Of a stretch of DNA of 9,123 nucleotides, positions 1 through 8,804 are shown in pieces (the first letter of the stretch is position 1; every line of letters starts with the position of its first letter). A program made the position numbers and the translations under genes. The notes beneath the pieces were generated by a model. It did no database searches. It worked only from the letters and a program-made list of their open reading frames with translations, and had not been told where the DNA came from. The DNA lies in IMG/VR virus record IMGVR_UViG_3300005964_000039, positions 1 to 9,123 of that record. One strand, written 5' to 3'.

Positions 1-830
1 TTAGCGTGAAATTTTCGCAATAAATGAAAAAAATTGAAAATTCCAATATTTTTCGTTTTTTGCAAATTTTTCGTTTTTTTCGCAAAAATGTGTAGAAATT
101 GTAAATTCCAATTAATTTATCATTTCCAAATATTAATTGGAGCGGTGCAAAAAATTGTAAATTCCTAAATTCCAATTAATCTGTCATTTTGCGTTAATTA
201 CACAAAAAATGAGAAAAATTGTAACTTACTAATTTCCTAAATTCCAATTAATCTGTCATATTGTGTAATTTGCTAACTTAAGTTATAAAATTGTAAACTT
301 GTAACTTACAAATATTTGTACATTTTCAGATAAAAACTTTGGAGCTATTATATTTGTAAATTCCTAACTTACAACTAATTTGTTGTTTTGCGAATATATT
401 AGTTATTAACTAAGAAATTAATAGTTAGGGGCTAGTCAACTCCTAATTGCAAATTACAAGTTACTAAACATATTCAGAATTTATTTAAATTATAAATTAG
501 TGGGCACTCAACTCACAGTTTAAAACTAATAGTTACTAAACATATTAGTAATTAGCCTTTTTGTTTTGCACCGATTGTTTTCGCTAGTTTTTTTCGTGTT
601 GCGGTGTTGAAATTGGAAGTTTAGAAAGAAAAGCTTATTAACCCCAAGAAAGCAATTGTTATGAGTAGTGGGCACTATCTTTCTTTTTATTATTATACTA
701 TTAGACATGTTATTACAAACTAATAATATAATATAATAATTTGCTAACTAGTAGTTATATAGTTAGATAGTTATCATATATACTAACTAGTTAGTTAGTA
801 GTTATTAATTTAATAGTTAGAATTGGACCC
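1..830. repeat. Non-coding terminal (ITR-like) region with degenerate direct repeats
   Basis: AAATTG(T/A)AA-type units start at 31, 96, 152, 216, 288 and about 353 (56-72 bp apart). Exact 26-bp repeat TTCCTAAATTCCAATTAATCTGTCAT at 162-187 and 234-259; exact 16-bp repeat AGTTACTAAACATATT at 459-474 and 531-546; TAGTT-rich tract about 745-820. AAATTCCTAAATTCC (159-173) resembles the reverse complement of the AATTTAGG-type repeat recalled near rudivirus termini. The partner ITR is not in the window, so ITR status is inferred. Confidence 0.65.
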
Positions 831-1143
831 AAAATAGATTGTTTTTCGCAATTTCACCGTTACAAGACAATTTTGAGTTTGCATTTTGAAATTATTCCAA
901 CAACGTTCAGATTTGCATTTTCAAATTTGCACTCGTTTGGCCTTATTTTCAAACATTGAAAATCTGAACTTGGCCTCATTTACAAAACAATTTAGTTCAG
1001 GTCCAGATGAAGAAATTAGTGATTTTGGAAGGTCCTTTTGAAGAAAACAGTTTTTCTTAGGAGCAATGGAAGAAATTGGAGGAACAAATTTTGCACGTTC
1101 TCTATAAAGAGAGATGATGATAAGGTATAAAAAGGTAAAGAGG

Positions 1144-1171
1144 TAAAAAGATAGAGAAAGATTTAATAAGG
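1144..1171 (+). promoter_or_regulatory. Repeated early-type archaeal promoter (purine-rich BRE + TATA TTTAATAA)
   Basis: TAAAAAGATAGAGAAAGATTTAATAAGG is identical (28/28) to 2200-2227 and has one mismatch to 2800-2827. TATA starts 38 nt before ATG 1200. Confidence 0.85.
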
Positions 1172-1199
1172 AGTGAAGACAAGATAGATATGAGGAAAA

Positions 1200-1400
1200 A
1201 TGGTCTACATATTGATCACGCAAGATGGAAAGTCGAGAAAGTTCCTAACCGATTCTAAGTTAGAGATATATCTAAAGAGACATGAAGGTGTTTTTTATGT
1301 TTTTCAGCCGGGCATTAAATTTGCAGGCGTTTCAGTTATAGTTTCTAAGGATGGTGAGATAGAAAAATTAGCAGATCAAACTATTCATGTGCCGAAATAA
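1200..1400 (+). CDS. Hypothetical protein (66 aa), early-gene candidate
   Basis: Own repeated promoter, GAGG RBS at 1192-1195, T-rich tract after the stop. No recognised family. Confidence 0.75.
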   Translation: MVYILITQDGKSRKFLTDSKLEIYLKRHEGVFYVFQPGIKFAGVSVIVSKDGEIEKLADQTIHVPK

Positions 1401-1480
1401 TTTAGTCTATTTTTTATTTTGTATTCTATTTTTAGGCTAGATTATCGATAATTTTTCTCATTTCTGTTTTATTTTTTTAG
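1401..1480 (+). terminator. T-rich archaeal terminator region
   Basis: Multiple oligo-T runs right after the stop. Contains 22-bp AATTTTTCTCATTTCTGTTTTA (1450-1471), repeated exactly at 4378-4399. Confidence 0.55.
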
Positions 1481-1504
1481 CTTATATTTTTATGCTTATT
1501 TTTT

Positions 1505-1580
1505 CTCATGTTAGAGTTAAGATTACTAAACGTGATAAAATTACAAATCTAAAGATAAAGGAAGTTTTAAATTTGTCATA
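1505..1580 (+). promoter_or_regulatory. Promoter of ORF150 (BRE TAAAGGAAG, TATA TTTTAAAT, downstream TGTCATA)
   Basis: BRE-TATA at about 1557-1572 followed by a GTC motif; GTGA RBS at 1598-1601. The 67-bp block 1505-1571 is duplicated at 3389-3455. Confidence 0.75.
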
Positions 1581-1610
1581 AAGGATAAACCGATTTAGTG
1601 AGAAGAAAAA

Positions 1611-2063
1611 ATGAGTCAAAATAAAGTTTTAAGTGAAGTAATTAATGATTTGGAAACTTTAAAAGAACAGATTGATAAAATTAAGGCAAGATTAACAACT
1701 ACAAATCATGATGATGACATAAAAGATGTTTTTGACAAATTAAGAAAAATTGCACATGATCATTTAATTAACGCAGTAATTTTTAGTTCAGACGGTGAAA
1801 CAAAATATATAACTGCATTTGCTGAAAGTAATGGATATAAATGTCTTCTTGTTTTAAATAATAAAGCATATTATTTTTATGATTATTCAATTATCAAAAA
1901 TGTTTTAAAAATAAGATATTTTACACAATACGATATTTCGGAGGATATTACCAATATTTTGAAAAAGTTACCAGAATCAAATATTGATTATGCTGAGCCG
2001 ATATTTTTCAAATTATACTATATCTTGAAAAAAGGCTATTCAATAGATTTTATTAAGGGCTAA
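1611..2063 (+). CDS. Hypothetical protein (150 aa) with N-terminal coiled coil
   Basis: Long ORF with promoter, RBS and T-rich terminator. Heptad pattern in residues about 5-30. Central region weakly resembles ORF92 (LVLNNKAYYF vs LVMQNKPFYF). Confidence 0.85.
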   Translation: MSQNKVLSEVINDLETLKEQIDKIKARLTTTNHDDDIKDVFDKLRKIAHDHLINAVIFSSDGETKYITAFAESNGYKCLLVLNNKAYYFYDYSIIKNVLKIRYFTQYDISEDITNILKKLPESNIDYAEPIFFKLYYILKKGYSIDFIKG

Positions 2064-2182
2064 TATTATTTTTTTCTTTTTTATAAATCAAATGAGGAAG
2101 ATATTTTTAAATTTATCATATAGCATACTTATTACTTCAAAATTAAGGTAAATTTCTAAGTAAGGGATTAGACGATAAAAAT

Positions 2183-2260
2183 AACGAAAGATAGAGATCT
2201 AAAAAGATAGAGAAAGATTTAATAAGGGGGAGTTACATATGTTATGTTGGTGAAAAGGAA
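2183..2260 (+). promoter_or_regulatory. Repeated early-type promoter and GGTGA RBS, copy upstream of ORF136
   Basis: Tandem AAAGATAGAGA (2187-2197, 2203-2213), TATA TTTAATAA 2218-2225, GGTGA 2249-2253, ATG 2261. Confidence 0.88.
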
Positions 2261-2671
2261 ATGAGTTATCCCAAAAAGGAAGAAATGAATCAAGAAGAAG
2301 AAAAGTTAAGTCAGTTGGATATAGGTCAATTGACAACTGAACAGCTTGGTGAACTAGTTAAGAGGGCGATTGATGAAGGCAAAGATGAGGCAAAGTTCAT
2401 ACTAGTCCTAAGCGAGTGGATGAGACCAGGGCCTTCATTTACAGACAAAGCAGAATTTACAATTCTTTATGGTGAAGTTGAGACTGTATTATTGCATCAT
2501 TATTACAATTATCCGACGACAGATGATTATACGTATGCATTAATTCCAAAAACAAGGACGGTTGTAGTATTATTTAAATGGAAAAATGATTATAAAGGCA
2601 AATTGGAGAAACAGGCTATTCTTTATATTTTTACATATCATAAAGGATGGGTATCAATAGATCTATACTAA
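2261..2671 (+). CDS. Hypothetical protein (136 aa), paralog of ORF140; candidate anti-defence protein
   Basis: About 49% identity (56/114, hand-aligned, ungapped) to ORF140. Shared motifs FILVLSEWxRPGxSFTD, YYxYPTT, YAxIPK, LYxFTYxxGW. Function is inferred from context only. Confidence 0.9.
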   Translation: MSYPKKEEMNQEEEKLSQLDIGQLTTEQLGELVKRAIDEGKDEAKFILVLSEWMRPGPSFTDKAEFTILYGEVETVLLHHYYNYPTTDDYTYALIPKTRTVVVLFKWKNDYKGKLEKQAILYIFTYHKGWVSIDLY

Positions 2672-2782
2672 GATATTTCATTTTTTTATCTTTTTCAGTT
2701 CTTTTTATTAAGCTTAATTTTCTAATTTTATGCTGTATTTTTTTAAAAACTAAGATAATATTTGTATGTTTAGATTTAAAGA

Positions 2783-2860
2783 AACGAAAGATAGAGATCT
2801 AAAAAGATAGAGAAAGATTTATTAAGGGGGAGTTACATAGTATGTATTGGTGAAAAGGAA
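2783..2860 (+). promoter_or_regulatory. Repeated early-type promoter and GGTGA RBS, copy upstream of ORF140
   Basis: Exactly 600 bp downstream of the 2183 copy and near-identical to it. TATA TTTATTAA 2818-2825. Confidence 0.88.
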
Positions 2861-3283
2861 ATGAGTTATCCCAAAAAGGAAGAAATAAATCAAGAGGAAA
2901 CCCATGAAGAGCAAGATATAATTAAGTCAAAACAGGAAGAATTAAGTGACGAAGAATTAAAGGAGCTGATTAAAAGAACATTGGAAAAAGGAGATTTTGA
3001 AGCAGAGTTTATATTGGTTTTGAGTGAATGGAATAGACCTGGAGGAAGTTTTACCGACTTCGGAAAAATTCGACTGCTTTATGGAAAAATTGAAATGTTT
3101 GAGTTGGATAGTTATTATGACTATCCAACAACAAATCAAACTGTGTATGCTATCATTCCAAAAAGCAAACTGGTTATATTACTACATGAAAGCGGAGACG
3201 ATTACCAGGGAAAAATGCAAAGATACGAAAAACTATACGTCTTCACATATTCACATGGCTGGAAATCACTTTCTCTAGATTAG
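2861..3283 (+). CDS. Hypothetical protein (140 aa), paralog of ORF136; candidate anti-defence protein
   Basis: Same MSYPKKEE N-terminus and conserved core as ORF136, acidic N-terminal segment, followed by T-rich terminator. Confidence 0.9.
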   Translation: MSYPKKEEINQEETHEEQDIIKSKQEELSDEELKELIKRTLEKGDFEAEFILVLSEWNRPGGSFTDFGKIRLLYGKIEMFELDSYYDYPTTNQTVYAIIPKSKLVILLHESGDDYQGKMQRYEKLYVFTYSHGWKSLSLD

Positions 3284-3388
3284 TTCAATTATTTTTTTAA
3301 TTTATTTTCTTTTTGTTAAGTTAAGTTTTTTATTTTTTTATTTTTTGCATTCCTAATTATATGTCTTTTATTTTTATCTATAATTTTA

Positions 3389-3455
3389 CTCATGTTACAG
3401 TTAAGATTACTAAATAATAGGAAAATTTGAATCTAAAGATAAAGGAAGTTTTAAA
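3389..3455 (+). repeat. Duplicate of the ORF150 promoter block with no downstream plus-strand gene (orphan promoter)
   Basis: 3389-3414 matches 1505-1530 (25/26); 3430-3455 matches 1546-1571 (26/26). Identity stops at the TATA box. Confidence 0.85.
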
Positions 3456-3511
3456 ATATTTTTTGGGATCTGAAAAAAATTATTTATAAAAAAATAGAAT
3501 GAATTTTATAT

Positions 3512-3871
3512 TTAGAAATAAATTGAAAATAGATATTGTTTATTTTCTGCAAGATATATATCAATTCTGTCATCATATTCGTTAGTTTCCATTTCTTCCA
3601 CATCTTCAATTTTTGTTTTTCCGTATTTTAGCCTTAATATCACTTCAGTTTTTCTATCATTAGGTAAGAACGATATTTCGAATTTAAATAATTTTTTCTT
3701 CAATAATAGAAATCCATTTATTTCTATTTTTTGACGATTTATTGTTATGATTTCTGGCATTTCCGACATTTCGAAAAAGAACATTAATAGTTCTATAATT
3801 TGCTTTCGATTTAATTTTTTTGAAATTATACTTATGTTTTGTTCCCAATTTTCAAATTCTTCTAAGCCCAT
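3512..3871 (-). CDS. Hypothetical protein (119 aa), distant paralog of ORF92
   Basis: Own minus-strand promoter (3898-3919). 19/76 ungapped identities with ORF92. Confidence 0.85.
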   Translation of the reverse strand: MGLEEFENWEQNISIISKKLNRKQIIELLMFFFEMSEMPEIITINRQKIEINGFLLLKKKLFKFEISFLPNDRKTEVILRLKYGKTKIEDVEEMETNEYDDRIDIYLAENKQYLFSIYF

Positions 3872-3897
3872 TTTTATCGTATGTATGTTTTATAGAC

Positions 3898-3919
3898 TTA
3901 TGTATATAAAGTTTTCTGT
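3898..3919 (-). promoter_or_regulatory. Promoter of ORF119 (ACAGAAAAC BRE + TTTATATA TATA)
   Basis: Minus strand reads ACAGAAAACTTTATATACATAA, TATA starting 39 nt before ATG. 20/22 identical to 5033-5054 (+). Divergent from the ORF98 promoter. Confidence 0.8.
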
Positions 3920-3971
3920 GAATTTTTAGAGTTTGATAGGATGTTTATTGAGAGATAAAAAGATAAAAGTT

Positions 3972-4023
3972 TAGAGAAAACTTTATTAAGGGCCGAGTAC
4001 ATATGCTATAACAGTGATGTGTA
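3972..4023 (+). promoter_or_regulatory. Early-type promoter of ORF98
   Basis: TAGAGAAAACTTTATTAAGGG (3972-3992), then CATATGCTATAACAGTGATG (4000-4019), 18/20 identical to 4480-4499. Confidence 0.82.
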
Positions 4024-4320
4024 ATGAAAGAGATAAAAGTAAGAGATAGGGAACAAAAATTGAAGATAGAACAAAAAGATAGCGGGGAATATTACTATTG
4101 TCCAAAATGTGGACAATTGTTAGTTATATTATATAAAAACAATGAATGGGGAATGATGAGTTCTTGTAAAGATTTCCAATGGGAGGAAATGACAATTAGT
4201 TGTTTTGTTGGGATCGGAGACGAATGTGACCCACAGGAAATAAAGCGATTAAGGTATCAAAGTCTAATACAAATTTTTGACGATTTGTTTGTCAATTTAC
4301 TTATACCGAAGCAAAGTTAA
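4024..4320 (+). CDS. Cys-rich, putative zinc-binding protein (98 aa)
   Basis: YYYCPKCG knuckle plus three further Cys. Own promoter, GTGA RBS and oligo-T terminator. Confidence 0.85.
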   Translation: MKEIKVRDREQKLKIEQKDSGEYYYCPKCGQLLVILYKNNEWGMMSSCKDFQWEEMTISCFVGIGDECDPQEIKRLRYQSLIQIFDDLFVNLLIPKQS

Positions 4321-4450
4321 TTTTTTTATTTTTTTGTTTTTTACGTTCATAATTCTATGTTTTTTATTTTTATGTCAAATTTTTCTCATTTCTGTTTTAA
4401 TATTTCAGAATCAAGAAAATTGAAATACTATAAAATGTATATGTAAAAAA

Positions 4451-4502
4451 ATAGAGAGAACTTTATATATGAGTTTTGTCATATGTTATATCAGTGATGG
4501 AA
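4451..4502 (+). promoter_or_regulatory. Early-type promoter of the winged-helix gene
   Basis: ATAGAGAGAACTTTATATA (4451-4469), TGTCATATG at 4477-4485, GTGA RBS 4494-4497. Confidence 0.8.
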
Positions 4503-4739
4503 ATGGATAGGAAGAAACGAATAGGAAAAAAGGAAAAGGAAGTTTTAGATTTTTTAATACGGAATAATGGTACTGTGTGGAAATCCGATATTCTTGAAAG
4601 GTTTGTGTATGCAAGTCGTTATACTAGTATAATAGAAAAACGGCTTTATAGAATGCAGGAAAAAGGTTTGATATTCATTAACAAAGAGATAAACCCAAAG
4701 ACAGGTCGAGAAAAACAAAGGGTTTATTTAAAGCAATAA
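4503..4739 (+). CDS. Winged helix-turn-helix DNA-binding protein (78 aa from ATG 4503)
   Basis: Pattern KEKEVLDFL...TVWKSDILERF...IEKRLYRMQEKGLI...TGREKQRVYL is typical of wHTH. The ORF-track TTG start at 4476 is only 7 nt after the TATA box, upstream of the expected TSS. ATG 4503 fits RBS and TATA spacing (41 nt vs 42-43 in sister genes). Confidence 0.82.
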   Translation: MDRKKRIGKKEKEVLDFLIRNNGTVWKSDILERFVYASRYTSIIEKRLYRMQEKGLIFINKEINPKTGREKQRVYLKQ

Positions 4740-4993: not shown

Positions 4994-5017
4994 TTATGAC
5001 ATTTTAAAATCTTTTTT
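4994..5017 (-). promoter_or_regulatory. TATA+GTC-type promoter of ORF67
   Basis: Minus strand AAAAAAGA-TTTTAAAA-TGTCATAA. Confidence 0.72.
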
Positions 5018-5070: not shown

Positions 5071-5134
5071 TAGGCGTAGCGCCTAAGGTGAAGGGGAATC
5101 TGGCGTAGCGCCACATTCCCCGGATTATTTCTGG
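5071..5134 (+). ncRNA. Candidate small structured non-coding RNA with two GGCG-UAG-CGCC hairpins
   Basis: GC-rich island in AT-rich intergenic DNA. Hairpin 1 TAGGCG-TAG-CGCCTA (5071-5085); linker AGGTGAA; hairpin 2 GGGGAAT-C-TGGCG-TAG-CGCCA-C-ATTCCCC (5093-5121); possible third CCGGA-TTATT-TCTGG (5120-5134) with a G-U pair. Promoter at the expected distance, T-rich tracts at 5148-5170, no credible ORF. Confidence 0.68.
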
Positions 5135-5189: not shown

Positions 5190-5522
5190 TTATTTCTTTC
5201 CTTTCCATAAAATTTCCAAACCTTGATTTTTATCCCAAGTTAGTCTTACATTTTTTAATTCTATTCTATCATGATTATTCAAATCTCCAGCAGTAATTTC
5301 TATATCTAAGCTTGATTTAAGAATATGTAAAAATTTATAATCGGGATTGTTTATCAAAAAATTCATTTCTACAAGACTTTCAAAGTCTGCAAAGGACAAA
5401 TCAACTAATGTTAAATTGAAAATATGTATATCATATAATCCATTCTCATATTTCCAATATTTAAAATCTAAACCGTTTTTCTTTAGAAAATCTAAAAGGT
5501 CTTTTCCTTCTTTTACTTTCAA
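5190..5522 (-). CDS. Hypothetical protein (110 aa), translationally coupled to thyX
   Basis: TTG start overlaps the thyX TGA stop (TTGA, 5519-5522); GGTGG RBS at 5529-5533. Confidence 0.8.
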
Positions 5523-6292
5523 AATAAACCACCGAATTTATTTCTAGCATTATTAATACATTTTGCTATATCATTTCTAGGAACGCCTTCTATACACCTT
5601 TTTGAAACGAAATTAGCACTTGAGGAATTTATTACACTTTCTATTGTTACAGGCTCAAAATTTACAAAGTTCTCATGTATCACGCAATTTGGCCCCGCAT
5701 ATTTAAATAGGATAGGATGGACTTTTTTGACTTCTTCCAACATTGCCCATGCTATCTTTCTGATCTCCCACTGTGATCTACTGCACAGCCTTAAGCTGAA
5801 GAAGTTATACAATTCTCTTGCGTTCATGGTCACTACTATGTTAGTGTTTACGCCATTTGGTAAAACATATCTTGCATCTTCTTCAGGAACGCCATTTTCC
5901 AAAAGAGAATAGTAATAATTATAAATTTGCTTATATGCAGTTTCAATAATACCTTTGGCCCTTTTTTCTACTGATTGTGGAACTACTGGTTTGAAAAATT
6001 CATCAATTGGTTTAGCAAATCTGTGGCTCATCTGTGTATAAGAGGCTATCCTGTGCCTGACCAACTGATGAGATGCCACTCTAGATATGTCCTCTATAGA
6101 GAAAGTATAAACTGAATGTTCCAAGACTGACCAATATCCGTGAAGTATGGCGTCTTTTATCCATGTTTCTATCTCTTCTTTTGTCATGTCTTTTTCATGA
6201 TGTTCCCATCCTTTCCTACTCCTAGACATCTTAGATGCTATGGCCACAATTTTCTCCCCATCTTGTGAAAAAGAAACTAATTGAACTTTCAT
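5519..6292 (-). CDS. thyX: Flavin-dependent thymidylate synthase ThyX
   Basis: Signature RHRx7S ([11 protein letters not shown]), plus [23 protein letters not shown] and TMNAREL...LR...QWEIR motifs. Confidence 0.97.
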
Positions 6293-6307
6293 TTATATCA
6301 TCTTTTT

Positions 6308-6496
6308 CTATTTTAATCTCATTATTTTTTCTATTCTGGCTTTTGGATTTGTTTCTTTTTCTAATTCCTCTTGTAAGAACTTTTGTAATGCTAACCGTAT
6401 TACTTCACTTCTATACATCCTATGATTTATAGCGTAAGTGTCCATTTTTATTATTAAATCTTCATCAGCTTTGAATACAATTACTCTAAGTCCCAT
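6308..6496 (-). CDS. Ribbon-helix-helix (CopG/Arc/MetJ) transcription regulator
   Basis: Beta strand RVIVFKA, helix DEDLIIKMDTYA, then RSEVIRLALQKFL. Start directly follows the ORF92 stop. Confidence 0.88.
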   Translation of the reverse strand: MGLRVIVFKADEDLIIKMDTYAINHRMYRSEVIRLALQKFLQEELEKETNPKARIEKIMRLK

Positions 6497-6775
6497 TTAA
6501 ATTACCCCCGTTACTTTTTTTGTTACGTGAGTTTTTCCTACCGTTACACCGATTGTGAACATTCCTTCAGATTTTAACTTATATATTCTTATTTCGAAAT
6601 AAAATGGTTTATTTTGCATAACTAAATATCCATTTATACTCATTTCCTTTTTCGCATAAAATAGAATTTCAAACTTTCCTGAAAAAAATATTGCACCGTC
6701 TAAAATATTATAAATATCTTCTTCTTCTAGTCTTTCAACTATCTTTTTCACTTCCTCTAATGTTGTGGAACTCAT
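6497..6775 (-). CDS. Hypothetical protein (92 aa), first gene of the ORF92-RHH-thyX-ORF110 operon
   Basis: GAGGG RBS, own TATA+GTC promoter, paralogous to ORF119. Confidence 0.85.
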   Translation of the reverse strand: MSSTTLEEVKKIVERLEEEDIYNILDGAIFFSGKFEILFYAKKEMSINGYLVMQNKPFYFEIRIYKLKSEGMFTIGVTVGKTHVTKKVTGVI

Positions 6776-6788
6776 GTTCCCTCAACAT

Positions 6789-6821
6789 AATGACGTAATA
6801 TGACGTTTAAAAACATTTATA
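6789..6821 (-). promoter_or_regulatory. TATA+GTC promoter with tandem ACGTCAT sites
   Basis: Minus strand TTTTTAAACGTCATATTACGTCATT; ATGACGT at 6790-6796 and 6800-6806 (10-bp period). Confidence 0.75.
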
Positions 6822-6837: not shown

Positions 6838-7452
6838 TTAGAACAGAGATCCATAGCATTTTCCCTTAAACTCACAGTTCTTACAGAAATAGGAATTAAC
6901 AGGCGGTATATTTTTATGATCTTCCATCTTTATATACTCTTTGAATTTCTTAATCCATTCTATCGCTTTTTGTATATATTCATCTATCAATTTTTTATCT
7001 ATTAAGAATTGTTTAACTTCTCTATTTAGCCTATTCAAATATATAATATAGATATTGTCAATTTTATAATTCTGTTGTTGTAAAAGATAGTAATATATAG
7101 CGACTTGGTAAAGATGATATTCTTTTATTTGGAAATAATTAGTTGAAATAGTTTTTAACTCTATAAGATCATTATTACAAATTAGATCTATTCTCCCAGA
7201 TATTTTCATTCCTTCAATTTCGCCATTTATTTCAATTTCAGTCTTACAATTTAACTTTTCTTCAAAATAGTGCTCAACTTTTTCATGATATTGTTCACCT
7301 AGGTCAAGACTAATTTCATTTACTGCTTTCTCAAATTCAAATTTTCTACTGAAATAGCTTTTTCTAAAGCAAATTCCAATTTCGCTAGGAAATATTGTAT
7401 CTTCTGGATATTTCATTTTGAAACTTTGTTTTACAAATTCTTCATAATTCAT
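6838..7452 (-). CDS. cas4: Cas4-like (RecB/PD-(D/E)XK) nuclease, SIRV2 gp19-like, not CRISPR-associated
   Basis: [10 protein letters not shown] first Fe-S Cys, GRID...IELKT catalytic motifs, QxxxY (QVAIY), C-terminal CxxC-x5-C; GGTGA RBS. Confidence 0.93.
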
Positions 7453-7454
7453 AG

Positions 7455-8765
7455 TTATTCACCGCCAAAATTGCTAAATCTCATAAAATTAATTATTTGG
7501 TTACATATTTCATCATTAGTTTTTTGACCTATTTGAAGATCAATATCAAAGGCCTGAAGAATCAGTTGTATATCGATACTTTGTTCTTGTCTTCTGGACT
7601 GAAGAGTATCACAGATTACATAATTTGTTGTTTTATTAATCTTATCTTGAATGATTTCTACTAAGGCCTTCAAAATTGAAGGATATAAAACTCTTCCATT
7701 TATTACTCTTTCATAAGTTTTTTTCACTGCTAATTGTATAATATGAATTCTGTCTAGTATAGCAGAAGTAAATATTTCATAATTGGCTAAATAGTCCTCA
7801 AGGTCAGGAGTTTTTAGCCGATCTATTGTCATAGAATATGGATTTCCTGCGTAAATAATTGGAATACATTTTTGGATAGTTGCTGATTTGGATTCTGAAC
7901 CGGCCCCTCTTGTCCATATACAATTTTCAATTCCGGTTGATAAAGTTGAATTTATGGCATTTAATTCTTTTGCAGAAAATCCATCTTTCCAAGTTTGTAT
8001 TTCGTCAAAAATTAGGCCGTTTGATAGAAATACAGCACCATACATATTATTTCTTGCATCATAAATTAAATTTGCATATGTCGGTGATTCGGTATAATAT
8101 CTAAAGTTAAAAACTTCTTGAAGTATCATGAAAGTTGTAGTTTTTCCAGTTCCTCTATTTGAAATTTCGATATAATTTATCTGTCTTTTTGTAATTGGAG
8201 ATTTAAATAATGGGAACAATCTAGGCAGAAATAAAAATATATCATTTACTTCCATTTTTGTTGGGTCATATCCGAAAGCCTGAAGAAGAAGGGCATATGT
8301 TTGTTTTTCTGAATTAGCTATCTCGAATAATTCTTTTGCAATTTCGTAATTATTTGGTGGTTCAATTGAATAAATATCTGATATATACCAATTTTCTACT
8401 CCTTTTCTTATTTTAACAAACATGTAACTAGTTACTAAATTGTAAAAATCATCAGGATTATCAGCAATTTGGTGAGGATCAAAAGAGCCTACAAATCCAT
8501 TTTGAAATCTTGCTATTATTTCATTTCCTTTAACTTTAAAATTTGTTATCTTAGAGATGAATTTTATTTCATTGAAAAATGGCAAATTAGAGTTAAAATA
8601 TTGTTGATCAGTCCCACGTTTATAAGCCTTTAAAATTCCATTTTTCTTAGATTCTTCAATTTGTTTTTCACCAATTATGAGATTTAAAATTCTTTCAGTA
8701 TCACGGGGATTATAAAAAAATGTATGAGATTTTACTTTATCCAAAAGACTAACTGAACTGCTCAT
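7455..8765 (-). CDS. AAA+ ATPase (Lon/MCM-like), SIRV2 gp18-like putative helicase
   Basis: Walker A RGTGKTT, Walker B LIFDE, sensor-1 IYAGNP, Arg finger AILDR; 436 aa; lies between the SSB and Cas4-like genes as in rudiviruses. Confidence 0.9.
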
Positions 8766-8771
8766 GAAAAA

Positions 8772-8804
8772 AATGATAACTTATGACGTTTTAAAACTCT
8801 TCCT
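8772..8804 (-). promoter_or_regulatory. Putative internal TATA+GTC promoter of the ATPase gene
   Basis: Minus strand GAAGAG-TTTTAAAA-CGTCATAAGTTATCATT; TATA (8789-8796) overlaps the upstream stop codon and ends 24 nt before ATG 8765. Confidence 0.6.

What the first reader, a model, noticed from the sequence alone, without database searches (positions are those of the whole stretch)
1144..4739. Island of monocistronic small genes under a shared early-type promoter: candidate anti-defence genes
Seen: a (T)AGAGA(A/G)A(GA/AC)TTTAWWA BRE-TATA precedes ORF66 (TATA 1162), ORF136 (2218), ORF140 (2818), ORF98 (3982) and the wHTH gene (4462), with a variant on the minus strand for ORF119 (3910). TATA-to-ATG spacing is 38-43 nt and each plus-strand gene ends in oligo-T tracts. 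Established: rudiviral anti-CRISPRs (AcrID1, AcrIIIB1) lie in terminal regions, are expressed early, and shared strong promoters have been used to predict archaeal anti-defence genes. Inference: these ORFs, none of which I recognise as a known Acr, are new anti-defence or host-takeover candidates.
Basis: partly seen in the sequence, partly recalled or inferred. Interest (0 to 1): 0.75.

Follow-up and report, generated by a model that had tools for sequence, protein, structure and literature searches.

The report
Rudivirus early-promoter accessory gene island
This is the variable end of a Yellowstone hot-spring rod-shaped archaeal virus, where seven small single genes each sit behind a published type of strong "early" promoter used to predict anti-defence genes; it is a real but ordinary new example, and what the proteins do is still untested.

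Summary
The purine-rich BRE plus TATA motif occurs at 1153, 2209, 2809, 3973 and 4453 on the plus strand, with a 2-mismatch variant at 3919-3904 on the minus strand. That is 6 hits at one mismatch or fewer against 0.46 expected, and none of 200 shuffles reached 6. Each site lies 35-43 nt before an ATG, and every island gene is followed by oligo-T runs.

The window is the whole contig IMGVR_UViG_3300005964_000039, the left end of a rudivirus close to the Yellowstone Usarudivirus group. The motif is the published early "anti-defence gene" (ADG) regulatory sequence of Bhoobalan-Chitty et al. 2024. The same core precedes SIRV2 aca8, acrID1 gp03 and gp47.

Most of the genes belong to families already listed there as predicted ADGs:
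- wHTH gene: ADG.02
- ORF136 and ORF140: ADG.05
- ORF98: ADG.20
- ORF119: ADG.21
- ORF66: the only unlisted family

All are real genes (dN/dS 0.12-0.51). They diverge much faster than the adjacent core, while their promoters stay 81-96% identical. None resembles a validated Acr, and the two AlphaFold models have no characterised structural relative. Anti-defence function remains guilt by promoter. This is a new member of a known kind.

The parts
1..1000 (.). ITR-like terminal repeat region of the linear rudivirus genome. It places the island at a genome end.
   Evidence: There are five copies of a ~47-nt unit at 87-396, spaced 63-72 nt, plus further repeat families. Bases 8 onward match the ends of Usarudivirus genomes.
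1130..1199 (+). Early-type regulatory sequence of ORF66 (core 1153-1168, TATA at 1162).
   Evidence: It is 93-95% identical to the upstream regions of the ORF66 homologs in L006 and L013, while the coding DNA is 67-85% identical.
1200..1400 (+). ORF66, a 66-aa protein and the first gene after the terminal repeats. It is a new small family not listed among published ADGs.
   Evidence: Homologs are found only in Yellowstone-type metagenome contigs. dN/dS is 0.12-0.26. There is no hit in the phage database, Pfam, PHROGs, NCBIfam or PADLOC.
1551..1610 (+). Variant promoter of ORF150: purine-rich BRE, TTTTAAAT, then GTCATA.
   Evidence: The same variant precedes SIRV9 gp08 (with a variant TATA), SIRV9 gp53 (ADG.18), the SIRV V3 homolog and the L009 homolog.
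1611..2063 (+). ORF150, 150 aa (phrog_12890). It is the ortholog of SIRV9 gp08 and 34% identical to SIRV9 gp53 (ADG.18).
2186..2260 (+). Early-type regulatory sequence of ORF136 (core 2209-2224, TATA at 2218).
   Evidence: An identical promoter plus 5' leader precedes an unrelated gene (ORF96) in L006.
2261..2671 (+). ORF136, a member of family ADG.05 (phrog_10536).
   Evidence: The AlphaFold model has pLDDT 76.7. There is no PDB relative. The only structural matches are uncharacterised rudivirus and lipothrixvirus proteins.
2786..2860 (+). Early-type regulatory sequence of ORF140 (core 2809-2824, TATA at 2818).
   Evidence: It is 92% identical to the ORF136 upstream region, while the two coding regions are 62% identical.
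2861..3283 (+). ORF140, the tandem paralog of ORF136 (ADG.05). The two are 46% identical in the family alignment and 53% identical pairwise.
   Evidence: dN/dS 0.20 between the paralogs.
3294..3462 (+). Repeated terminator-plus-promoter cassette ending in an orphan copy of the ORF150-type promoter. No plus-strand gene follows it.
   Evidence: Direct repeat D4, 1410-1571 against 3294-3455 at 70% identity, plus families D7 and D9.
3512..3871 (-). ORF119, family ADG.21 (phrog_28348). It is transcribed towards the genome end and is a distant paralog of the core gene ORF92 (SIRV2 gp20 family).
   Evidence: dN/dS is 0.43-0.51.
3872..3940 (-). Variant early-type promoter of ORF119 (core 3919-3904, TATA starting at 3910). 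It is divergent from the ORF98 promoter.
   Evidence: The inverted repeat 3906-3937 / 3955-3986 is 78% complementary. The region is 84-87% identical in L009 and L012.
3950..4023 (+). Early-type regulatory sequence of ORF98 (core 3973-3988, TATA at 3982).
   Evidence: The core and downstream part are nearly identical to the Aca8 promoter of L006.
4024..4320 (+). ORF98, a cysteine-rich small protein of family ADG.20 with a zinc-ribbon-like N-terminal half.
   Evidence: C26, C48, C60 and C68 are invariant and C29 is nearly so. The AlphaFold model has pLDDT 75.8 and no PDB relative. There is a distant link to SIRV2 gp04.
4430..4496 (+). Early-type regulatory sequence of the wHTH gene (core 4453-4468, TATA at 4462). 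It is the best conserved promoter of the island.
   Evidence: It is 91-96% identical in L009, L011 and L012, while the coding DNA is 61-67% identical.
4497..4739 (+). Winged-helix protein of 78-80 aa (start at 4497 or 4503), family ADG.02 (phrog_9113). It sits at the boundary between the island and the conserved core.
   Evidence: Most family members give sub-threshold winged-helix Pfam hits. The best relatives are the C-terminal ~65 residues of PADLOC CARF3 models, matched by 7 of 9 members with best E 3.4e-7. dN/dS is 0.13.

Best explanation
Bases 1144-4739 are the variable accessory-gene island at the left end of a linear rudivirus genome. The virus comes from a metagenome of Yellowstone type and is closest to Usarudivirus SIRV4-11, V3, V60 and V65.

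**Architecture (shown).** Seven small genes are each their own transcription unit. Each has a purine-rich TFB-recognition element abutting a TATA box, embedded in a shared regulatory sequence of about 55-65 nt. A short leader carrying a GGTGA-like ribosome-binding site follows, and oligo-T terminators come directly after the stop codon. This is the same regulatory sequence that drives the immediate-early genes of SIRV2, including aca8, acrID1 and gp47.

**Mechanism (inferred).**
1. On entry, host TBP, TFB and RNA polymerase fire all these promoters at once without needing any viral factor.
2. The promoters are later shut off by a virus-encoded DNA-binding protein that recognises the conserved flanks.
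3. That protein is Aca8, encoded elsewhere in this genome as it is in the relative L006, and/or the island's own winged-helix protein (ADG.02).

**Gene products.** The products belong to the fast-evolving families ADG.05 (two copies), ADG.20 and ADG.21, an ADG.18 relative, and the new ORF66 family. They are most likely early host-directed proteins. Inhibition of host defence systems is the leading guess but is unproven.
For: **Motif is real and correctly placed.**

**Same motif in relatives.**
- Terminal genes of SIRV9, including Aca8 gp07.
- SIRV V3, where 10 of 12 hits lie in the terminal 3-4 kb.
- The syntenic contigs L009-L011.
- SIRV2 aca8 gp01/gp54, acrID1 gp03, gp05, gp07, gp08, gp47 and gp52.

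**Literature.** PMC11065993 describes this regulatory sequence, its early expression in SIRV2 and its use to predict ADGs.

**Family assignments in that paper's Supplementary Data 1.** ADG.02 and ADG.05, ADG.21, and ADG.20 and ADG.18.

**Aca8 under the same motif in a relative.** Seen in L006.

**All ORFs are real genes.** dN/dS is 0.12-0.51.

**The island evolves faster than the core.** Against the same relative (L009), amino-acid identity is 59-66% in the island and 86-99% in the core, and dN is 0.21-0.36 against 0.006-0.09. Meanwhile the 75 nt upstream of the genes stay 81-96% identical where the coding DNA is 61-70% identical.

**The wHTH protein is a winged-helix protein.**
Against: - No expression data exist for this virus. 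Early timing is transferred from SIRV2 by promoter similarity.
- No Aca8 gene is present in the 9.1-kb contig (best tblastn E 0.38), so the repressor is not shown.
- No member of ADG.02, .05, .18, .20 or .21 has been tested experimentally, as far as the paper and its supplement show.
- Neither AlphaFold model has a characterised structural relative.
- No protein matches a validated Acr or a host protein.
- The published pipeline listed SIRV9 gp55 (ADG.21) without an ADG label and did not list SIRV9 gp08, the ORF150 ortholog.
- The paper itself notes that the same promoter type precedes housekeeping host genes. A strong promoter alone does not imply anti-defence.
Confidence: 0.7

Rival explanations
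1. The genes form an early regulon whose main job is regulation and host takeover (transcription, cell cycle, DNA metabolism), not inhibition of defence systems. The wHTH protein is a temporal switch. The zinc-ribbon-like ORF98 and the other proteins bind host housekeeping targets.
For: - The wHTH protein is conserved in all usarudiviruses and ARV1 at a fixed position next to the core, with dN/dS 0.13.
- ORF119 is a paralog of a conserved core gene next to the recombination operon.
- The same promoter type serves host housekeeping genes.
- No similarity to any validated Acr was found.
Against: - The island proteins diverge 3-50 times faster than the neighbouring core.
- They vary in copy number and content between close relatives. 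This is the usual signature of arms-race genes.
- The validated Acrs of SIRV2 sit in the same kind of island under the same promoter.
Confidence: 0.25
2. The promoter similarity is only a by-product of recent duplication and recombination of gene cassettes in the terminal region. It is similarity by descent and does not reflect selection for co-regulation.
For: - ORF136 and ORF140 are a tandem duplication sharing 122 nt at 92% identity.
- Whole intergenic blocks, including terminators, are repeated: 1410-1571 against 3294-3455, and 1434/3318/4314.
- An orphan promoter copy sits at 3435-3462.
- In L006 the ORF136 promoter and leader are joined to an unrelated gene.
Against: - Across diverged viruses the upstream 75 nt stay 81-96% identical while synonymous sites of the attached genes are near saturation (pS 0.7-0.8). 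This requires purifying selection or continual homogenisation of the regulatory sequence.
- The same core is kept in Icelandic SIRV2 and Yellowstone viruses.
Confidence: 0.08
3. The motif matches and small ORFs are chance products of an AT-rich sequence.
For: The window is 72% A+T. One of the six pattern hits (4758-4743) looks like chance.
Against: - 0 of 200 shuffles reach the observed count.
- All five plus-strand hits lie 35-43 nt before an ATG.
- Every ORF has homologs under purifying selection.
Confidence: 0.01

Closest known systems
Early 'anti-defence gene' regulatory sequence of Rudiviridae (Bhoobalan-Chitty et al., Nat Commun 2024, PMC11065993), as in SIRV2 gp01/aca8, gp03/acrID1 and gp47
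   Same: - Purine-rich BRE directly upstream of a TTTAWWWA TATA box, within about 60 nt of shared flanking sequence.
- Single small genes clustered at the genome end.
- The same 16-nt core matches the SIRV2, SIRV9 and V3 promoters.
   Different: - This contig has no aca8.
- The downstream flank differs: GGGGGAGTTACATA here against AGTTTTTACATA in V3 and SIRV9.
- Timing is not measured here.
Predicted ADG families ADG.02, ADG.05, ADG.20, ADG.21 (and ADG.18) of Usarudivirus SIRV4-11, V3, V60 and V65
   Same: - Sequence homology: 34-68% amino-acid identity to SIRV members by tblastn, and PHROG E-values of 1e-30 to 1e-60.
- The same terminal location and the same promoter type.
   Different: - A tandem duplication of ADG.05.
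- ORF150 groups with SIRV9 gp08, which the paper did not list.
- A ThyX/ORF110/RHH62 block lies behind the island, where SIRV9 has none.
Validated archaeal anti-CRISPRs AcrID1, AcrIIIB1, AcrIA3 and AcrIII-1 (SIRV2 gp03/10/45/46, gp48, gp47, gp37)
   Same: Genomic neighbourhood and promoter type.
   Different: No detectable sequence similarity. Profile scores are below 3 bits and BLASTP E-values are 0.15 or higher. The ADG.05 model does not retrieve any Acr structure from the PDB.
Aca8, the wHTH/HTH anti-CRISPR-associated regulator of rudiviruses
   Same: A small DNA-binding protein under the same regulatory sequence. It is a candidate repressor of the regulon.
   Different: The window's wHTH protein is not Aca8. 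In SIRV10 and SIRV9 the two are separate neighbouring genes: gp04 and gp05, and gp07 and gp09. Aca8 finds nothing in the window.
C-terminal winged-helix domain of CARF-wHTH regulators (PADLOC 'CARF3--CARF' models; Csa3-type architecture)
   Same: 7 of 9 ADG.02 members align over their whole length to the last ~65 residues of profiles about 207 residues long, with best E 3.4e-7.
   Different: - No CARF domain is present.
- The solved Csa3 structures were not retrieved by the ADG.02 profile at E<=10.
- That 'CARF3' means the Csa3 clade is my recollection, not checked.

Membership tests
Rudiviral early/ADG regulatory sequence (PMC11065993) | Purine-rich BRE immediately upstream of a TTTAWATA-type TATA box | tested here: met
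   AGAGAAAGA or AGAGAAAAC followed by TTTAATAA, TTTATTAA or TTTATATA at five plus-strand sites and one minus-strand site.
Rudiviral early/ADG regulatory sequence (PMC11065993) | Regulatory sequence around the promoter shared among several single genes of the same genome (motif width of at least 30 nt) | tested here: met
   A 54-nt direct-repeat family has 5 copies at 63-98% identity. The consensus spans about 65 nt. The paper's exact MEME/RSAT thresholds were not run.
Rudiviral early/ADG regulatory sequence (PMC11065993) | Genes are single (not in operons) and cluster at a genome terminus | tested here: met
   Each gene has its own promoter and oligo-T runs after the stop. The island starts right after the ITR-like repeats.
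Rudiviral early/ADG regulatory sequence (PMC11065993) | Transcription immediately after infection, then repression | not testable with these tools
   The source is only a metagenomic contig. Timing is known for SIRV2 promoters with the same core.
Rudiviral early/ADG regulatory sequence (PMC11065993) | aca8 under the same motif in the same genome (for the Aca8-type subgroup) | tested here: inconclusive
   There is no Aca8 in the 9.1-kb contig. The rest of the genome is not available. The relative L006 has Aca8 under the motif at its terminal island.
ADG.02 / ADG.05 / ADG.20 / ADG.21 families | Sequence homology to listed members | tested here: met
   - wHTH against SIRV10 gp05 and SIRV7 gp03.
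- ORF136 and ORF140 against SIRV7 gp01, SIRV9 gp01 and V3.
- ORF98 against V65 32221-32484.
- ORF119 against SIRV9 gp55 and the homologous SIRV8 gene; SIRV8 gp59 is the ADG.21 entry listed in the supplement, and I did not check that it is the gene hit.
AcrID1 family | Sequence or profile similarity to SIRV2 gp03, gp10, gp45 or gp46 | tested here: not met
   All profile scores are 3 bits or lower and BLASTP E-values are 0.15 or higher.
AcrIIIB1 / AcrIA3 / AcrIII-1 | Sequence or profile similarity to SIRV2 gp48, gp47 or gp37 | tested here: not met
   There are no significant matches. There are no tblastn hits to SIRV2 from any island protein.
Aca8 | Homology of the window's wHTH protein to Aca8 | tested here: not met
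   Aca8 against the window gives best E 0.38, inside the nuclease gene. Aca8 and ADG.02 are separate genes in SIRV9 and SIRV10.
Winged helix-turn-helix DNA-binding proteins | Recognisable wHTH domain | tested here: met
   - Among 9 family members, sub-threshold hits to Trans_reg_C (6 of 9), LexA_DNA_bind (5 of 9), MarR_2 (3 of 9) and HTH_24 (3 of 9).
- IclR N-terminal domain, E 0.021.
- PADLOC CARF3 C-terminal domain, E down to 3.4e-7.
Csa3-type CARF-wHTH regulators | N-terminal CARF sensor domain | tested here: not met
   The protein is only 78-80 aa long and aligns only to the C-terminal third of the CARF3 profiles.

The most novel reading that the evidence does not exclude
The winged-helix protein (ADG.02, 4497-4739) may be a sensor-less copy of the DNA-binding domain of a Csa3-type CARF regulator. 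The published work notes that the viral early promoter type is shared with the host subtype I-A cas interference promoter, which Csa3b represses. The viral protein could therefore bind both promoter sets. It would shut off the viral early genes after their burst, and it would re-repress the host cas genes after Csa3b is released. That would make it an anti-CRISPR acting at the level of transcription and an Aca-like autoregulator in one protein.
Probability: 0.12. Interest if true: 0.65.

Novelty: new member of a known kind. Interest (0 to 1): 0.3.

Why it matters
The contig adds a clean, independent example of the rudiviral early-promoter regulon from an uncultured virus.

It also gives quantitative support to the idea behind promoter-guided discovery. 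The regulatory sequence is held at 81-96% identity while the attached genes drift to about 60% protein identity, duplicate, or are swapped.

It yields a short, concrete candidate list for testing in Sulfolobus or Saccharolobus:
- ORF66, a new family.
- The duplicated ADG.05 pair.
- The cysteine-rich ADG.20 protein.
- ADG.21.
- The ADG.18-like ORF150.

It also points to ADG.02 as a regulator worth testing on both viral and host cas promoters. It does not change what is known about how such islands work.

Tried and rejected
- **Known domains.** Pfam, NCBIfam and PADLOC scans found no significant family for ORF66, ORF150, ORF136, ORF140, ORF119 or ORF98; PHROGs matched four families of unknown function (phrog_12890, 10536, 28348, 9113), and ORF66 and ORF98 had no significant PHROG hit either.
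- **Solved structures by sequence.** There was no informative match.
- **AlphaFold plus Foldseek.**
  - The ADG.05 model gave a best PDB hit of E 0.17 with TM below 0.3, and only uncharacterised archaeal-virus proteins in BFVD.
  - The ORF98 model gave a best PDB hit of E 0.69.
- **Aca8 in the window.** None was found.
- **Host homologs of ADG.02.**
  - The genome-contig scan found none.
  - The plasmid database gave no match.
  - An attempt to fetch Sulfolobus CRISPR loci, to obtain a Csa3 sequence, used a repeat pattern recalled from memory and found nothing. The direct ADG.02-against-Csa3 comparison could therefore not be made.
  - A literature search for the meaning of PADLOC's 'CARF3' label was uninformative.
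- **Sources of distant ADG.05 relatives.** Cluster look-up gave only unnamed metagenome proteins.
- **Rfam and tRNA scans of the window.** Nothing was found.
- **Operator search.** An inverted repeat (GTAAAAA ... TTTTTAC flanking the BRE/TATA) is clear in SIRV V3 and SIRV9 promoters. It is only partly kept in the window, mainly at the wHTH promoter, so no operator is claimed.
- **Considered and rejected.** The minus-strand hit at 4758-4743 is not taken as a promoter, because no ORF follows it and it lies in a terminator T/A tract.

Full report
**What the window is**

The 9,123 bases are the complete contig IMGVR_UViG_3300005964_000039. Megablast finds only rudiviruses. The best matches are the Yellowstone Usarudivirus group (SIRV4-11, V3, V60, V65). 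Identity is 78-81% and is confined to the terminal repeats and the conserved core from about 6,840 onward.

The layout is as follows:
- Bases 1 to about 1000: ITR-like repeats.
- Bases 1144-4739: the island under study.
- After that, on the minus strand: ORF67, ORF110, ThyX (5519-6292), an RHH protein, ORF92, a Cas4-like nuclease (6838-7452), a 436-aa ATPase (7455-8765), and the start of the gp17-like ssDNA-binding protein.

Syntenic contigs from Yellowstone metagenomes (L009 from a 34,310-nt contig, plus L010, L011 and L012) carry the same order: ADG.05, ORF119 on the minus strand, ORF98, wHTH, ORF67, ORF110, ThyX.

**Check of the observation**

The pattern AGAGARANNTTTAWWA matches six times at one mismatch or fewer. 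The expectation is 0.46, and none of 200 dinucleotide-preserving shuffles reaches six.

The five plus-strand matches start at 1153, 2209, 2809, 3973 and 4453. The ORF119 variant lies on the minus strand at 3919-3904 with two mismatches, and its TATA starts at 3910. The sixth match (4758-4743, minus) lies in the T/A-rich terminator after the wHTH gene and precedes no ORF. I treat it as chance.

TATA-to-ATG spacings are as follows:

| Gene | Spacing (nt) |
|---|---|
| ORF66 | 38 |
| ORF136 | 43 |
| ORF140 | 43 |
| ORF98 | 42 |
| ORF119 | 39 (TATA 3910 to ATG 3871) |
| wHTH, ATG at 4497 | 35 |
| wHTH, ATG at 4503 | 41 |

The second wHTH ATG is the one kept in L011.

Every island gene is followed by two to six runs of five or more T within 80 nt, and the first run begins 1-18 nt after the stop. 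Sense coding sequence has 0.28 such runs per 80 nt. The operonic core genes ThyX, ORF92 and ATPase436 have none.

Three qualifications apply:
- The ORF136 and ORF140 sites belong to one tandem duplication: 122 nt at 92% identity.
- The shared sequence is about 55-65 nt long, not 16. It runs from a GAAAGATAGAGA-like element through GTAAAAAGAT, the BRE and the TATA box, to an ACATA element and a GGTGA-like ribosome-binding site.

**What the motif is**

It is the regulatory sequence described by Bhoobalan-Chitty et al. 2024 (PMC11065993). That paper reports the following:
- In SIRV2, 11 of 13 immediately-early genes share a consensus made of a purine-rich BRE and a TTTAWATA box with conserved flanks. 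These genes include aca8, acrID1 and acrIIIB1.
- The authors used such virus-specific consensus sequences to predict 'anti-defence genes' (ADGs) across archaeal viruses.

The same 16-nt pattern used on the window finds the corresponding promoters in these genomes:
- SIRV2: aca8 (gp01/gp54), acrID1 gp03, gp05, gp07, gp08, gp47 and gp52.
- SIRV9: terminal genes including Aca8 gp07 and ADG.02 gp09.
- SIRV V3: ten of twelve hits lie in the terminal 3-4 kb.
- L009-L011: the island genes.

In the related contig L006, the motif precedes an Aca8 homolog, an ORF66 homolog, and an unrelated 96-aa gene. That 96-aa gene has a promoter and leader identical to those of ORF136.

**What the genes are**

Cross-referencing homologs to the paper's Supplementary Data 1 gives these assignments:

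| Gene | Family | Evidence |
|---|---|---|
| ORF136, ORF140 | ADG.05 ('conserved among several archaeal viruses') | |
| ORF98 | ADG.20, through its V65 homolog | |
| ORF119 | ADG.21 | |
| ORF150 | Ortholog of SIRV9 gp08 (not listed); 34% identical to SIRV9 gp53 (ADG.18) and shares its promoter variant | |
| ORF66 | New family | |

The ORF150 promoter variant is a purine-rich BRE, then TTTTAAAT, then GTCATA. ORF66 has no relative in the phage database or in the supplement. It has four homologs, all on similar metagenome contigs.

All of these are real genes. Nei-Gojobori dN/dS against relatives is 0.12-0.26 for ORF66, 0.20 for ORF136, 0.23-0.44 for ORF98, 0.43-0.51 for ORF119 and 0.13 for the wHTH gene.

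**Evolutionary signature**

Against the same relative (L009), the island and the core differ sharply:

| Measure | Island | Core |
|---|---|---|
| Amino-acid identity | 59-66% | 86-99% |
| dN | 0.21-0.36 | 0.006-0.09 |

In contrast, the 75 nt upstream of the island genes are 81-96% identical in the same pairs whose coding DNA is 61-70% identical. The clearest cases are the wHTH gene (96% against 64%), ORF66 against L006 (93% against 67%), and ORF136 against ORF140 (92% against 62%).

This reproduces, with numbers, the published qualitative remark that the regulatory sequences are far better conserved than the genes. It argues for selection on the promoter. Recombination clearly also moves promoter and terminator cassettes around. 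The evidence is the repeated intergenic blocks 1410-1571 and 3294-3455, an orphan promoter at 3435-3462, and the promoter swap in L006.

**Function of the proteins**

None of the island proteins resembles a validated archaeal Acr. Profiles of the ORF66, ORF98, ADG.05 and ADG.02 families, and BLASTP with every window protein, find nothing significant in SIRV2 AcrID1 paralogs, AcrIIIB1, AcrIA3 or AcrIII-1.

*ADG.05.* A profile search finds 108 cluster representatives among 1.84 billion proteins. The AlphaFold model has pLDDT 76.7 and shows two N-terminal helices followed by eight strands. It has no PDB relative. In BFVD it matches only uncharacterised proteins of SIRV10, ARV2 and two lipothrixviruses.

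*ORF98.*
- Cysteines 26, 48, 60 and 68 are invariant, and C29 is nearly so.
- The AlphaFold model has pLDDT 75.8 and no PDB relative.
- The N-terminal CxxC...C region links distantly to SIRV2 gp04 (HMM E 1.7e-7 in a 24-protein set; hhalign probability 82%).

*The wHTH protein.*
- Most members give sub-threshold hits to winged-helix families.
- The best relatives are the C-terminal ~65 residues of PADLOC 'CARF3--CARF' profiles, matched by 7 of 9 members with best E 3.4e-7.
- It is not Aca8, which is a separate neighbouring gene in SIRV9 and SIRV10.

**Most likely mechanism**

*Shown:*
- Each gene has its own strong-type BRE/TATA promoter and its own oligo-T terminator.
- The promoters form one family shared with experimentally early SIRV2 genes.
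- The proteins are fast-evolving members of viral accessory families.

*Inferred:*
- Host TBP, TFB and RNA polymerase fire these promoters immediately on entry.
- Aca8 (encoded elsewhere in this genome, as in L006) and/or ADG.02 bind the conserved flanks and later repress the set.
- The remaining proteins act on host targets, with defence systems as the leading but untested candidates.

I put 0.7 on this overall picture. I put roughly even odds on at least one of the non-regulatory genes being a true defence inhibitor.

**Rivals**
- *An early regulon devoted to regulation or host takeover rather than anti-defence (0.25).* In favour: the conservation of ADG.02, the paralogy of ORF119 with core ORF92, and the fact that the same promoter type serves host housekeeping genes.
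- *Promoter similarity purely by descent through cassette duplication (0.08).* Against: promoters stay conserved across viruses whose synonymous sites are saturated.
- *Chance (0.01).* Excluded.

**Comparison with the known, and novelty**

This is a new member of a known kind. The regulatory logic and five or six of the seven gene families are already in the 2024 catalogue, which also analysed a contig of about 9 kb from a Yellowstone MAG carrying ADG.02, Aca8 and ADG.20.

New here:
- The ORF66 family.
- The tandem ADG.05 duplication.
- The quantitative contrast between promoter and gene conservation.
- The link of ADG.20 to SIRV2 gp04.
- The similarity of ADG.02 to the DNA-binding end of CARF-wHTH regulators.

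The last point supports a speculative reading. The paper notes that the early promoter type is shared with the host I-A cas promoter, which is controlled by Csa3b. A sensor-less Csa3-like winged helix could therefore regulate both viral early genes and host cas genes. I could not obtain a Csa3 sequence to test this directly, and I rate it at about 0.12.

**Limits**
- Only 9.1 kb of the genome is available.
- No expression data exist.

Noticed in passing
window 5073-5122 (between ORF110 and ORF67): A G+C-rich double hairpin sits in an otherwise 72% A+T sequence: two copies of GGCGTAGCGCC, the second nested in GGGGAAT...ATTCCCC. Folding gives -27.6 kcal/mol with z = -2.76. The element is 92% conserved in L009-L012, with one compensatory pair (A-T to G-C in the outer stem). 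There is no Rfam or tRNA match. Its function is unknown.
   Followed up: partly
window 4995-5008, 6799-6812, 8782-8795 (all minus strand); 1565-1580 (plus strand): A second promoter class, TTTAAA(W)(N)GTCATA, precedes the core transcription units ORF67, ORF92 and ATPase436 (3 hits against 0.26 expected; 0 of 200 shuffles reach 3). With one extra base it also precedes ORF150. It probably corresponds to the 'virus-specific consensus element' reported for SIRV promoters. My memory is that this element is GTC after the TATA box, but I did not verify that.
   Followed up: partly
window 3512-3871 (-) and 6497-6775 (-): ORF119 (ADG.21) is a distant paralog of the conserved core gene ORF92, the SIRV2 gp20/ORF84a family that sits next to the Cas4-like nuclease. 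The evidence is shared PHROG hits, 37% identity over 49 aa, and a 48-nt DNA repeat (3674-3721 against 6590-6637). An accessory copy of a core protein could act as a decoy or variant subunit.
   Followed up: partly
window 1410-1571 vs 3294-3455; 1434, 3318 and 4314; 3435-3462; 2091-2125: Whole intergenic cassettes (oligo-T terminator plus the next promoter) are repeated at 68-79% identity. One copy ends in an orphan ORF150-type promoter with no gene behind it, and a degenerate copy follows ORF150. This suggests gene gain and loss by recombination between intergenic cassettes.
   Followed up: partly
L006 5102-5184 (-) vs window 2181-2263 (+): In a related virus, the promoter and 5' leader of ORF136 are joined, almost base for base, to an unrelated 96-aa gene. 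This is direct evidence that promoter cassettes are exchanged between different cargo genes.
   Followed up: no
window 5190-6496 (-): ORF110, a ThyX thymidylate synthase (257 aa) and the RHH62 gene lie between ORF67 and ORF92. In SIRV9 the homologs of those two genes (gp10 and gp11) are adjacent. L009-L011 share the insertion. RHH62 is 46% identical to SIRV2 gp21 (CopG-like).
   Followed up: no
window 87-396: Five copies of a ~47-nt unit, spaced 63-72 nt, carry the core AAATTCCAATTAAT. Further repeat families lie up to about 850. These are typical rudiviral ITR repeats. The contig starts inside the terminal repeat, so the true genome end is probably missing.
   Followed up: no
L009 604-918 and 3430-3726: The relative L009 carries two diverged paralogs of the ORF98 (ADG.20) family in one island, 37% and 60% identical to ORF98. 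In that virus ADG.20, rather than ADG.05, is the duplicated family.
   Followed up: no
L009 6861-8168 (homolog of window 7455-8765): The 436-aa core ATPase (SIRV2 gp18, annotated 'protease' in RefSeq) carries a precomputed Pfam BrxL_ATPase hit. BrxL is the BREX defence ATPase.
   Followed up: no
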